Assembly: GCA_054661495.1 (NCBI GenBank)
Contig: BAAFSQ010000406.1
Span: forward strand, 1-7,438
DNA length: 7,438 nucleotides
DNA from: Zygophlyctis sp. KS116
Lineage: Eukaryota; Fungi; Chytridiomycota
Direction of reading: 5' to 3'
Part shown: positions 5,075 to 7,415 of the stretch, in pieces
How the letters are laid out: every line of letters begins with the position of its first letter
Position numbering within the stretch: position 1 is the stretch's first letter
Notes under the pieces: model-generated
Database searches by the model: none
The model's input: the letters and a program-made list of their open reading frames with translations, nothing else
What the model was told of the DNA's origin: nothing
Program-made: the position numbers and the translations under genes

Positions 5075-5151
5075 AGCGCCTCTCCGCGATTTCAATCCAC
5101 CCACATTTGTTTACTATAAAAGGGGCGCCTGATTTCAAAAAAATAAAACAA
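5075..5151 (+). promoter_or_regulatory. Putative promoter of LRR gene 2 with TATA box TATAAAAG (5115-5122)
   Basis: AGCGCC at 5075, CAATCCACCC at 5093, canonical TATAAAAG 37 nt upstream of the ATG at 5152. Confidence 0.6.
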
Positions 5152-6794
5152 ATGCTCAACACTGATGACAAGAACTTTAAGATCTTGGCAGTGGCCCTTT
5201 GTGCCTTTATTTTAGGAGTAGAGTCTCAGATTTCTACTTGCACTTCAACTTCTCCTGAATGTTGTTGGGTTGTCCGATCTTGGCAGTTGATGGGTCAGAC
5301 AGTTCCAGCTGGAATCACATCTATTGATAACAGTTGTTGTACTCTTCCAATGTTTGGTGTGACTTGTGATTCTACAAACAAAGTGACAGAAATCCTTTGG
5401 GCCTGGGTAGGCCTCTCAGGTTTGATTCCTACCGAGATTGGAAAGTTGACAAGTTTGACTTTGCTGTAATTATTTTCTAAATTTAAAATTCAAGTCGTCT
5501 CGAAAGAAATCAACTCTCTGGTACAATTCCTGCTTCGATTGGAAATTTAAGAAGTTTGACTCATCTGTAATTATTTTCTAAATTTAAATTCAAGTCGTCT
5601 TTCCGGCAATCAACTCTCTGGTTCGATCCCTGTTGAAATTGGAAATTTGGTAAAATTGTTCGTTCTGTAATTATTTTCTAAATTTAAAATGATAGTCAAC
5701 TTTCTGGCAATCAACTCAATGGTTCAATTCCTGCTTCGATTGGAAATTTGATGAATTTGCAAGGGCTGTAACTATTTCTAAATTTAAAATTTAAAGTTAT
5801 CTCGGAGCGAATCAATTCCCGGGTTCGATCCCTGATTGGATTGGAGATTTGATAAATTTGACTTCGCTGTAATTATTTTCTAAATTTAAATTAAAGTGAT
5901 GTTTCAAACAATCAATTCTCAGGGTCATTTCCTGATTGGATGGGAAATTTGTCAACCTTGACTTTGCTGTAATTATTTTCTGAATTTAAAATTAATAGTG
6001 ATATTTCCTTCAACCAACTCTCAGGACCAATTCCTGCTGAAATTGGAAATTTGATAAATTTGACTGGGCTGTAATTATTTTCTAAACTTAAATGAAAGTA
6101 GTCTAGGCCAGAATGATCTTTCTGGTTCAATTCCTGCTTCGATTGGAAATTTGATAAATTTAAGAGATCTGTAATTATTTTCTAAATTTAAAATTAAAAG
6201 TGATCTTTCAATTAATCAACTCATAGGTTCAATTCCTGCTTCGATTGGACAATTGACAGGCTTAACTTCGCTGTAATTATTTTCTAAATTTAAAATGAAA
6301 GTTATCTTAACAACAATCAACTCTCAGGTTCAATTCCTTCTACGATTGGAAAGTTGATAAAATTGCAATATCTGTAATTATTTATGAATTTAAAATTAAA
6401 GTGAACTTAACAACAATCAACTCTCAGGACCAATTCCCTCTACCATTGTAAATTTGGTACAATTGCGTGAACTGTAATTATTTTCTAAATTTAAAATTAA
6501 AAGTGATCTTAACAACAATGTGAATCTCACTGGAGATTTTACTCCAAGATGTGGAATGATAGTGTAATGATTTTAAACTAATGCAGCAGTAATTCGGAAG
6601 GTACAGGGGTAACCTTGAACTCTTGCGAAAAGTTGTCAGATACCTTTTATTTGGGTATGGGAATTGGATTTGGATTGCTGGGCCTGTTAATTGTTGGAGC
6701 AGTAGTCTTCAAAATTAGAAAGGAACATTCTGCCAAGTTAAATGATAGTCAAGGAGATAAAACCGGTTCCAAGGGATATAAAATCCTAATCTGA
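5152..6794 (+). CDS. LRR receptor-like type I membrane protein (LRR gene 2). Exons 5152-5465, 5495-5566, 5595-5666, 5696-5767, 5797-5868, 5897-5968, 5999-6070, 6099-6170, 6201-6272, 6302-6373, 6402-6473, 6504-6563, 6587-6794; about 433 aa
   Basis: Signal peptide KILAVALCAFILGVES; Cys-rich N-cap; about 12 plant-type 24-aa LRRs; C-cap ..FTPRCG..GTGVTLNSC; TM helix FYLGMGIGFGLLGLLIVGAVVF (6645-6710); KIRK stop-transfer; 27-aa tail. Twelve phase-2 introns; the spliced CDS is 1302 nt and open. Confidence 0.92.
5466..6503 (+). repeat. Tandem array with about 100-102 nt period: 11 near-identical introns (consensus GTAATTATTTTCTAAATTTAAAATTAAAG) alternating with ten 72-nt LRR exons
   Basis: Introns at 5466-5494, 5567-5594, 5667-5695, 5768-5796, 5869-5896, 5969-5998, 6071-6098, 6171-6200, 6273-6301, 6374-6401 and 6474-6503. 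Confidence 0.95.
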
Positions 6795-7154: not shown

Positions 7155-7415
7155 ATGTTTCCTTCAACTCTCAAGAACCTCATATTTGCTTTAACTCTCT
7201 CTTCATTGATCTCAGGGACTGATGTAGCGGTTTCATGTAGTTCTTCTTCTCCTGAATGTTGTTGGGTTGTCCGATCATGGCAATTGATGGGGAAAACTAC
7301 TGATGTTTCTCCTACTAGTGCTACTGCTTGTTGTTTTACGGGACCTTTAACGGGACCTTTAACGGGACCTTTTACGGGACCTTTTACGGGACCTTTAATC
7401 CAACTGGAGAAGTAG
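7155..7415 (+). CDS. 5' part of a third family member (signal peptide + CCWVVRSWQLMG cap + TGP[LF] repeats); 3' end unresolved at the window edge
   Basis: Signal peptide MFPSTLKNLIFALTLSSLISG; CSSSSPECCWVVRSWQLMG..ACC. The TAG at 7413 may lie in a phase-2 intron starting GTAG at 7412, or result from a frameshift. Confidence 0.75.
   Translation: MFPSTLKNLIFALTLSSLISGTDVAVSCSSSSPECCWVVRSWQLMGKTTDVSPTSATACCFTGPLTGPLTGPFTGPFTGPLIQLEK
7338..7397 (+). repeat. Five copies of a 12-nt tandem repeat ACGGGACCTTT[A/T] encoding TGP[L/F]
   Basis: Units at 7338, 7350, 7362, 7374 and 7386. Confidence 0.95.

What the first reader, a model, noticed from the sequence alone, without database searches (positions are those of the whole stretch)
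5466..6563. One-exon-one-LRR cassette array: candidate combinatorial receptor-diversification system in a fungus-like genome
Seen: ten consecutive exons are exactly 72 nt (24 aa) and all flanking introns are phase 2 at the same Leu codon. Any exon can therefore be skipped, duplicated, deleted or swapped without breaking the frame. The same architecture occurs in LRR gene 1. Known: 72-nt one-LRR exons occur in plant ERECTA-family kinases and in Ectocarpus ROCO LRR-GTPases, where exon shuffling was proposed as an immune-diversification mechanism; lamprey VLRs diversify through LRR cassettes. Extracellular plant-type LRR receptors are not the standard fungal non-self sensors (fungal NLRs typically use WD40, TPR or ankyrin repeats). 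Inference: this is a modular, rapidly rearranging extracellular recognition repertoire for defence or for host/prey sensing.
Basis: partly seen in the sequence, partly recalled or inferred. Interest (0 to 1): 0.9.

Follow-up and report, generated by a model that had tools for sequence, protein, structure and literature searches.

The report
Scrambled LRR receptor family in chytrid
A freshwater chytrid fungus carries dozens of genes for surface or secreted binding proteins built from one-repeat exons, and it keeps remixing pieces of these repeats between genes by ordinary DNA recombination while the binding surface evolves very fast, which is the signature of an arms-race recognition repertoire rarely seen in fungi.

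Summary
There are ten 72-nt exons at 5495-6473, and all eleven introns are phase 2 and split a Leu codon (CT|T). The gene encodes a 432-433 aa receptor-like protein: signal peptide, Cys cap, plant-type LRRs, membrane helix, short tail. The host is a chytrid (RPB1 tree, one named relative). The family is large: 89 cap matches and 251 LRR-core matches in 12.7 Mb. Rearrangement is real. Paralogs with 88-93% identical caps have different, non-collinear arrays, and repeats share identical tracts across genes (24 tracts of 40 nt or more against 1.2 expected). Binding-face codons have pN 0.64 against pS 0.29. The moving unit, however, is often a short tract that cuts through exons, not the exon itself. 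No exon skipping was seen; probable transcripts of relatives show intron retention. The exon boundary is the plant ERECTA/Ectocarpus type II one, not the ROCO type I one. Best reading: germline concerted evolution plus diversifying selection, as in Podospora HNWD genes, acting on extracellular LRRs. It is not VLR-like. The ligand is unknown. The scan reported this family before on other DNA of this genome (s1-560669).

The parts
5152..5465 (+). LRR gene 2, exon 1: hydrophobic signal-like N-terminus, Cys-rich N-cap and first atypical LRR
   Evidence: 89 matches in own genome
5495..6473 (+). ten 72-nt phase-2 exons, one plant-type LRR each (5495, 5595, 5696, 5797, 5897, 5999, 6099, 6201, 6302, 6402)
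   Evidence: 55-80% identical to each other
5466..6503 (+). eleven homogenised 28-30 nt introns, 75-100% identical to each other, LRR-family specific
6504..6563 (+). 60-nt C-cap exon, also phase 2 at both ends
6587..6794 (+). last exon (acceptor 6586 or 6589): Cys, Gly-rich transmembrane helix, about 26-residue basic tail, no kinase
   Evidence: hydropathy 2.35 over 19 aa; this end occurs in 4 places in the genome
2456..4341 (+). LRR gene 1, 554 aa: signal, two cap+LRR+C-cap modules, conserved KR site, then a Cys-rich helical domain of about 130 aa with no structural match
   Evidence: 44 matches to the domain in own genome
7155..7415 (+). third paralog start: signal and N-cap, then a 12-nt micro-repeat (7334-7398) and an early stop; broken or cut by the contig end
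286..2272 (+). neighbour: TAF5-like gene; its introns do not share the LRR-intron consensus (60-69%), an internal control

Best explanation
Gene 2 is a membrane-anchored member of a large chytrid family of plant-type LRR binding proteins. The repeat region is a tandem array of ~101-nt units (72-nt exon plus ~29-nt intron). Because units across dozens of genes are in register and 70-90% alike, they recombine in the germline: unequal crossovers change repeat number and swap gene ends, and short non-allelic conversion tracts of tens of bases overwrite parts of units within and between genes. This homogenises the introns and the framework codons. Selection keeps new residues at the five exposed beta-strand positions that flank each intron. 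The result is many binding surfaces mounted on a few C-terminal outputs (membrane anchor, LRR-only secreted, KR plus Cys-rich domain). Shown: architecture, family size, mosaicism, non-collinearity, excess amino-acid change. Inferred: the recombination mechanism, surface location, and an antagonistic partner. I think host/prey recognition or manipulation is somewhat more likely (about 0.45) than defence against bacteria, viruses or parasites (about 0.35); about 0.2 for other roles.
For: Family size. 164 such exons in 28 arrays of 1-16. Paralog pairs with 88-93% identical caps have 6 vs 9 and 10 vs 7 exons with no collinear match; one pair is also 95% identical downstream. Identical tracts of 40 nt or more: 24 vs 1.2 under codon-wise permutation; linkage falls to background within about 10-20 nt. 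A 63-nt tract from window exon 7 into intron 7 is identical to a gene on another contig; a 210-nt two-exon duplication in L016 has intronic ends. Nearest exon is in the same gene for only 19% of exons. pN at codons 1,3,4,22,23 is 0.64 vs framework pS 0.29. Between samples: 5 of 25 exposed codons vs 2 of about 76 other LRR codons changed residue in gene 1 (p about 0.01); all 4 differences between L035 and L036 lie at codons 22, 23, 6, 3. A related metagenome locus (L038) has homogenised introns with another consensus (77% within, 63% to gene 2), as concerted evolution predicts. Gene 2's cap is closest to LRR-only genes (77% aa vs 59-64%) but its tail to L016/L015 (89/84% nt).
Against: Only 20 loci plus the window were analysed; the assembly is fragmented short-read data, so some duplications or chimeric repeats could be misassemblies. 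pN/pS is uncorrected, between paralogous recombining repeats, not a codon model. Both ends of one exon are co-inherited more than expected (6 vs 0.9) while ends across an intron are not (1 vs 1.0), so whole-exon moves matter too. Intron interiors diverge less than synonymous sites (0.18 vs 0.28; gene 2 0.10 vs 0.33), which conversion alone does not predict. Allelic change in exon number was not shown: gene 1 has the same exons in a strain about 2% diverged, and the gene 2 array was not spanned. No ligand, localisation or expression data for this gene.
Confidence: 0.72

Rival explanations
1. Diversity is made at the RNA level: symmetrical 72-nt exons are skipped in combinations, giving many isoforms per gene, as reported for brown-algal ROCO genes.
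For: All exons are frame-symmetric. Near-identical splice sites could allow donor-acceptor mispairing. ROCO splice variants are reported (PMC11378527). One TM-type paralog (L015) has a frameshifted 59-nt exon that skipping would bypass.
Against: Introns are only 24-30 nt; intron retention is the dominant mode in fungi (PMC12861292, PMC6142364, abstracts only). Six of 13 probable transcript contigs keep one intron, with an immediate stop. No RNA joint was among the 15 listed for the window. Skipping could not be tested properly without same-strain RNA.
Confidence: 0.08
2. The conserved intron is a dedicated recombination or mutagenesis signal that directs exchange, possibly within a generation (VLR-like or programmed).
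For: Intron interiors are better conserved than synonymous sites; the intron sits in the middle of the hypervariable strand; across-intron linkage is nil; an exact copy of the consensus intron occurs in a contig from another sample (L033).
Against: Relatives and older subfamilies have other or unhomogenised intron sequences. Much of a 29-nt intron is splice signal. Many tract ends lie inside exons. Genes are complete; no cassette reservoir or inverted orphan exons; one 5'-truncated array only. Sample X1 is identical to the window on both flanks and gave no usable evidence on the array.
Confidence: 0.08
3. Passive tandem-repeat instability with relaxed constraint on exposed residues; no arms race. 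The one-repeat exon is just the ancient plant-like LRR gene structure.
For: The same 72-nt phase-2 structure is common in plant LRR-RLKs (PMC3050792) and in unshuffled Ectocarpus type II kinases (PMC3341825). Several paralogs are broken.
Against: Relaxation gives pN about equal to pS, not 2.0-2.4 times higher at five positions; synonymous sites are far from saturation (0.28 vs 0.69 possible); between-sample changes concentrate at the same positions.
Confidence: 0.08
4. The mosaic pattern is mostly an assembly artefact of collapsed, similar repeats.
For: 1175 contigs; many LRR genes sit on short contigs; public contigs break inside the array.
Against: Repeats differ at 20-45% of sites, frames stay open, and independent assemblies from other samples show the same design and internal duplications.
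Confidence: 0.04

Closest known systems
Podospora anserina HNWD (het-d, het-e, het-r) WD40 repeat arrays (PMC1805685, PMC2873952)
   Same: Fungal family whose repeats are exchanged within and between loci, vary in number, and are under diversifying selection at a few surface codons. This is what the system works like.
   Different: Intracellular NLRs with NACHT and WD40 repeats. Here the repeats are extracellular plant-type LRRs, each unit includes a homogenised intron, and no NACHT match was found in the (incomplete) assembly.
Ectocarpus ROCO type I LRR exons (PMC3341825, PMC11378527)
   Same: One 72-nt exon per LRR, non-collinear arrays in recent paralogs, intra- and intergenic recombination, selection on the concave face.
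   Different: Type I boundary lies before GxxP; here it is the type II boundary. No ROC-COR domain; introns too short to hold orphan or inverted exons; product is extracellular.
Plant ERECTA/SERK-type LRR-RLK exons and Ectocarpus type II LRR-kinase exons (PMC3050792, PMC3341825)
   Same: Same phase-2 intron in the first Leu of xxLxLxx, 72-nt exons, same 24-aa repeat class.
   Different: No kinase. Ectocarpus type II exons showed no sign of shuffling, whereas these are scrambled. Common descent of the intron position was not tested.
High-copy LRR-RLK-like orthogroups of chytrids (Lobulomycetales MAG, PMC13618815); rare fungal LRR receptors (PMC2939053); secreted fungal LRR effectors such as ZtLRR (bioRxiv 10.1101/2025.08.22.671746)
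   Same: LRR surface or secreted proteins are known, and can be high-copy, in chytrids; host sensing, immunity and receptor mimicry have been proposed.
   Different: In the passages I searched none describes exon structure, intron homogenisation, repeat scrambling or the KR plus Cys-rich domain. Orthology to those groups was not tested.
Lamprey variable lymphocyte receptors
   Same: Capped LRR solenoid with a hypervariable concave face.
   Different: VLRs are assembled somatically from cassettes into an incomplete germline gene (own knowledge; PMC3341825). Here genes are complete.

Membership tests
Plant-specific LRR class | 24-aa repeat LxxLxLxxNxLsGxIPxxIGxLxx | tested here: met
   per-position consensus of 164 exons; family member P0018 hits FLS2, GSO1, ERL1 ectodomains best
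LRR receptor-like protein (architecture) | signal peptide, Cys cap, LRRs, single TM helix, short tail without kinase | tested here: met
   signal peptide judged by hydropathy only
LRR receptor-like protein (plant RLP lineage) | common descent with plant RLPs; signalling through a partner kinase | not tested
   no tree built; the N-cap has no Pfam match
ERECTA/SERK-type and Ectocarpus type II LRR exons | 72-nt exons, phase-2 intron in first Leu of xxLxLxx | tested here: met
   120 of 133 split codons Leu family-wide; definitions
LRR receptor kinases | cytoplasmic kinase domain | tested here: not met
   frame ends at 6794; none of the resolved C-termini is a kinase
Ectocarpus ROCO shuffling system | type I exon boundary (starts at GxxP) | tested here: not met
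   exons start xLxxN
Ectocarpus ROCO shuffling system | ROC-COR GTPase domain | tested here: not met
Ectocarpus ROCO shuffling system | non-coding or inverted LRR exons inside introns | tested here: not met
   introns 24-30 nt; no opposite-strand exons in arrays; one frameshifted in-line exon
HNWD-type repeat turnover | concerted evolution within and between loci | tested here: met
HNWD-type repeat turnover | diversifying selection on surface codons | tested here: met
   pN/pS 2.0-2.4 at five codons, uncorrected
HNWD-type repeat turnover | repeat number polymorphic between alleles | tested here: inconclusive
   varies between paralogs; gene 1 unchanged in one diverged strain, gene 2 not spanned
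HNWD/NLR family itself | NACHT domain and WD40 repeats | tested here: not met
VLR-type somatic assembly | incomplete germline gene with flanking donor cassettes | tested here: not met
   26 of 28 arrays follow a cap, 1 is cut by a contig end, 1 is 5'-truncated
VLR-type somatic assembly | cell-to-cell rearrangement driven by a deaminase | not testable with these tools
   needs clonal long reads
Splicing-based repertoire (ROCO variants, Dscam) | exon-skipping isoforms | tested here: inconclusive
   none seen; only contigs from other strains

The most novel reading that the evidence does not exclude
The family-wide 29-nt intron is kept by selection as a recombination cassette border in the middle of the binding strand, so that left and right halves of each strand are actively recombined across some 250 repeats, perhaps within a generation, to give an anticipatory receptor or targeting repertoire; many members deliver a protease-released Cys-rich domain with no structural match.
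Probability: 0.08. Interest if true: 0.9.

Novelty: new variant of a known kind. Interest (0 to 1): 0.55.

Why it matters
Fungi were held to lack expanded extracellular LRR receptors (PMC2939053), and how zoosporic fungi recognise hosts or enemies is open. This family gives a concrete, testable candidate: dozens of genes, a defined five-residue variable strand, differences between lake samples, and alternative outputs (anchor, free, cargo domain). It also shows HNWD-style repeat turnover acting on exon-intron units, with the tiny introns as a readable record of gene conversion. The general mechanism is known from other groups, and the scan had already reported the family from another contig, so the gain is the lineage, the protein class and the sub-exon scale of shuffling.

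Tried and rejected
Pfam finds nothing for the N-cap, TM tail or Cys-rich domain. A word-based search with the Cys-rich region of P0018 found only itself; the Atlas gave no usable hit; a confident model (pLDDT 83) had no match in PDB or Atlas (best Z 4.2, TM 0.41); the neurotoxin rows have E above 1 and TM under 0.2 and are noise. This does not prove a new fold. No named organism was found among ten cap homologs; P0113 is a bacterial LRR. The 18S search failed. My own idea that the shuffled unit is centred on the intron was not supported in genomic data (1 vs 1.0), though L031 shows such a case. The YxxL tail ending is not conserved: the two closest TM paralogs have no Tyr there. Depth dips over the array in X1 and X3 were not used, because even the likely source run has holes there. 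One search was a mistaken call.

Full report
Observation. The window holds a TAF5-like gene and three paralogous LRR genes on the + strand. For gene 2 (5152-6794), eleven GT-AG introns of 28-30 nt between 5466 and 6503 leave ten exons of exactly 72 nt and a 60-nt cap exon. Every intron is phase 2, splits CT|T (Leu), and carries an in-frame stop right after the donor. The joined frame is open for 432-433 aa. The product has a hydrophobic N-terminus, a Cys-rich cap, plant-type LRRs, a C-cap, one strong membrane helix and a short tail. Gene 1 uses the same intron site but has two short modules and ends in a Cys-rich domain behind a conserved KR.

Organism. The assembly is 12.7 Mb in 1175 contigs, and the sequence occurs in freshwater and estuary runs. 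RPB1 from a contig that also carries an LRR gene has Cladochytrium tenue as its best named hit and groups with it and with environmental sequences at SH-aLRT 100 (quick tree, one gene, long branch). It is most likely an uncultured chytrid.

Family. The N-cap matches 89 places, the LRR core pattern 251, the Cys-rich domain 44 and the TM tail 4. In 20 fetched loci plus the window there are 164 72-nt exons in 28 arrays of 1-16 units. C-termini vary: KR plus Cys-rich domain, TM, a 12-13 residue end, a Thr-rich stalk, another domain, or a further module. Metagenome contigs from other samples carry the same proteins as uninterrupted frames with 1 to more than 20 repeats; I read them as transcripts because six keep a single intron of the same type, one identical to the consensus. 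Genomic relatives L035, L036 and L038 have the same 72-nt phase-2 exons.

Evidence of rearrangement. Paralogs with 88-93% identical caps differ in exon number (6 vs 9; 10 vs 7 with 95% identical downstream DNA) and their exons are no closer by position than any family members. An exon's nearest neighbour lies in its own gene in 19% of cases (5% by chance), so mostly elsewhere. Gene 2's ten exons are fully scattered on the exon tree, which is poorly resolved. Identical runs of 40 nt or more occur 24 times against 1.2 after codon-wise permutation, while linkage between sites drops to background within 10-20 nt. Tracts include a 210-nt two-exon duplication with both ends in introns (L016), a 63-nt tract from inside window exon 7 into intron 7 shared with a gene on another contig, and a 77-nt tract that crosses an intron. 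Chimeric exons with one part from one repeat and the rest from another are visible in L016, L023 and L031. Both ends of an exon are co-inherited somewhat more than expected (6 vs 0.9 pairs, two from the L016 duplication), ends across an intron are not (1 vs 1.0). So whole exons do move, but they are also overwritten in parts. In-register homologous recombination keeps the frame with or without introns, so phase symmetry is at least partly a by-product of duplicating an exon-intron unit (inference).

Selection. Codons 1, 3, 4, 22 and 23, the exposed strand residues on both sides of the intron, use 15-19 amino acids. Their pN is 0.64 against framework pS 0.29 and four-fold 0.28; four-fold saturation would be 0.69. 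In a strain about 2% diverged, gene 1 changes residue at 5 of 25 exposed codons and 2 of about 76 other LRR codons (p about 0.01; codon classes counted by hand). All four differences over 729 nt between L035 and L036 fall at codons 22, 23, 6 and 3. These are uncorrected counts, not a codon model.

The introns. In the young subfamily intron interiors differ at 0.18 of sites, and at 0.10 within gene 2. The motif is specific to LRR arrays; TAF5 introns do not share it. A related locus has homogenised introns with a different consensus, and another has unhomogenised ones. That fits concerted evolution rather than a fixed signal. That introns are better kept than synonymous sites is not fully explained; splice signals filling much of 29 nt and gapped alignment may account for it.

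Mechanism. Most likely (0.72): germline unequal crossover and short-tract conversion among some 250 in-register units, with diversifying selection on the binding face. Exon skipping (0.08) lacks support: introns are tiny and relatives show retention. A programmed or intron-directed process (0.08) is not excluded but has no reservoir of cassettes. Neutral instability (0.08) does not explain pN above pS. Assembly artefact (0.04) may affect single cases. The biological role is inferred from the arms-race pattern; host or prey recognition and effector-like action (compare ZtLRR) are slightly favoured over defence because most members are secreted and many carry a KR-preceded cargo domain.

Comparison. 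It works like Podospora HNWD repeat turnover but is not an NLR. It resembles Ectocarpus ROCO shuffling but fails the boundary, GTPase and intronic-orphan tests; its boundary is that of type II exons, which were not found shuffled in Ectocarpus, and of plant ERECTA/SERK genes. High-copy LRR receptors were noted in another chytrid genome without exon analysis in the passages read; fungi in general have few. My paper searches found no description of this family, but the library is incomplete.

Earlier scan notes. A follow-up on another contig (s1-560669) reached the same general view, and first-reader notes on this window mention the intron conservation, the KR site and the TM tail. I read them after my analyses; they are not independent support.

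Limits. 

Verdict. Real, a new variant of a known kind, interest 0.55.

Noticed in passing
window:3820-4341 and 44 matches in the genome: Conserved KR (Kex2-like) site followed by a ~130-aa six-Cys helical domain; confident model with no PDB or Atlas match. Possibly a released cargo.
   Followed up: partly
L028-L042: Six of 13 probable transcript contigs keep exactly one intron, which stops the frame at once; could give truncated soluble forms or decay.
   Followed up: partly
L015 (minus strand, fifth LRR exon): TM-type paralog with a 59-nt frameshifted LRR exon between intact splice sites.
   Followed up: no
L018:8575-9001 (+): Three LRR exons and a Cys-domain end with no N-cap in the 420 nt upstream: a 5'-truncated array.
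   Followed up: partly
window:7155-7438: Third paralog with a different signal peptide and a 12-nt x 5.4 micro-repeat replacing the rest of the cap, then a stop.
   Followed up: no
window:2371-2532 and 5075-5228: Genes 1 and 2 share upstream and 5' sequence (86% over 96 nt; 74% over 31 nt), suggesting a duplicated promoter.
   Followed up: no
window:4370-4480: A-rich 29-nt degenerate repeat after gene 1; related sequence is multi-copy in the public runs and variable in X1.
   Followed up: no
L012:1-936, L013:505-1143, L019:2151-2687: Frames that look like transposon remnants (by eye, not searched) lie next to LRR genes.
   Followed up: no
L020:3000-3950, L023:1350-2243: Some members carry Cys-rich tandem repeats (CPAG-type) in front of the LRR cap.
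   Followed up: no
L010, L012, L017, L020: Several members have a broken Cys-rich domain (frameshift or stop), consistent with high gene turnover.
   Followed up: no
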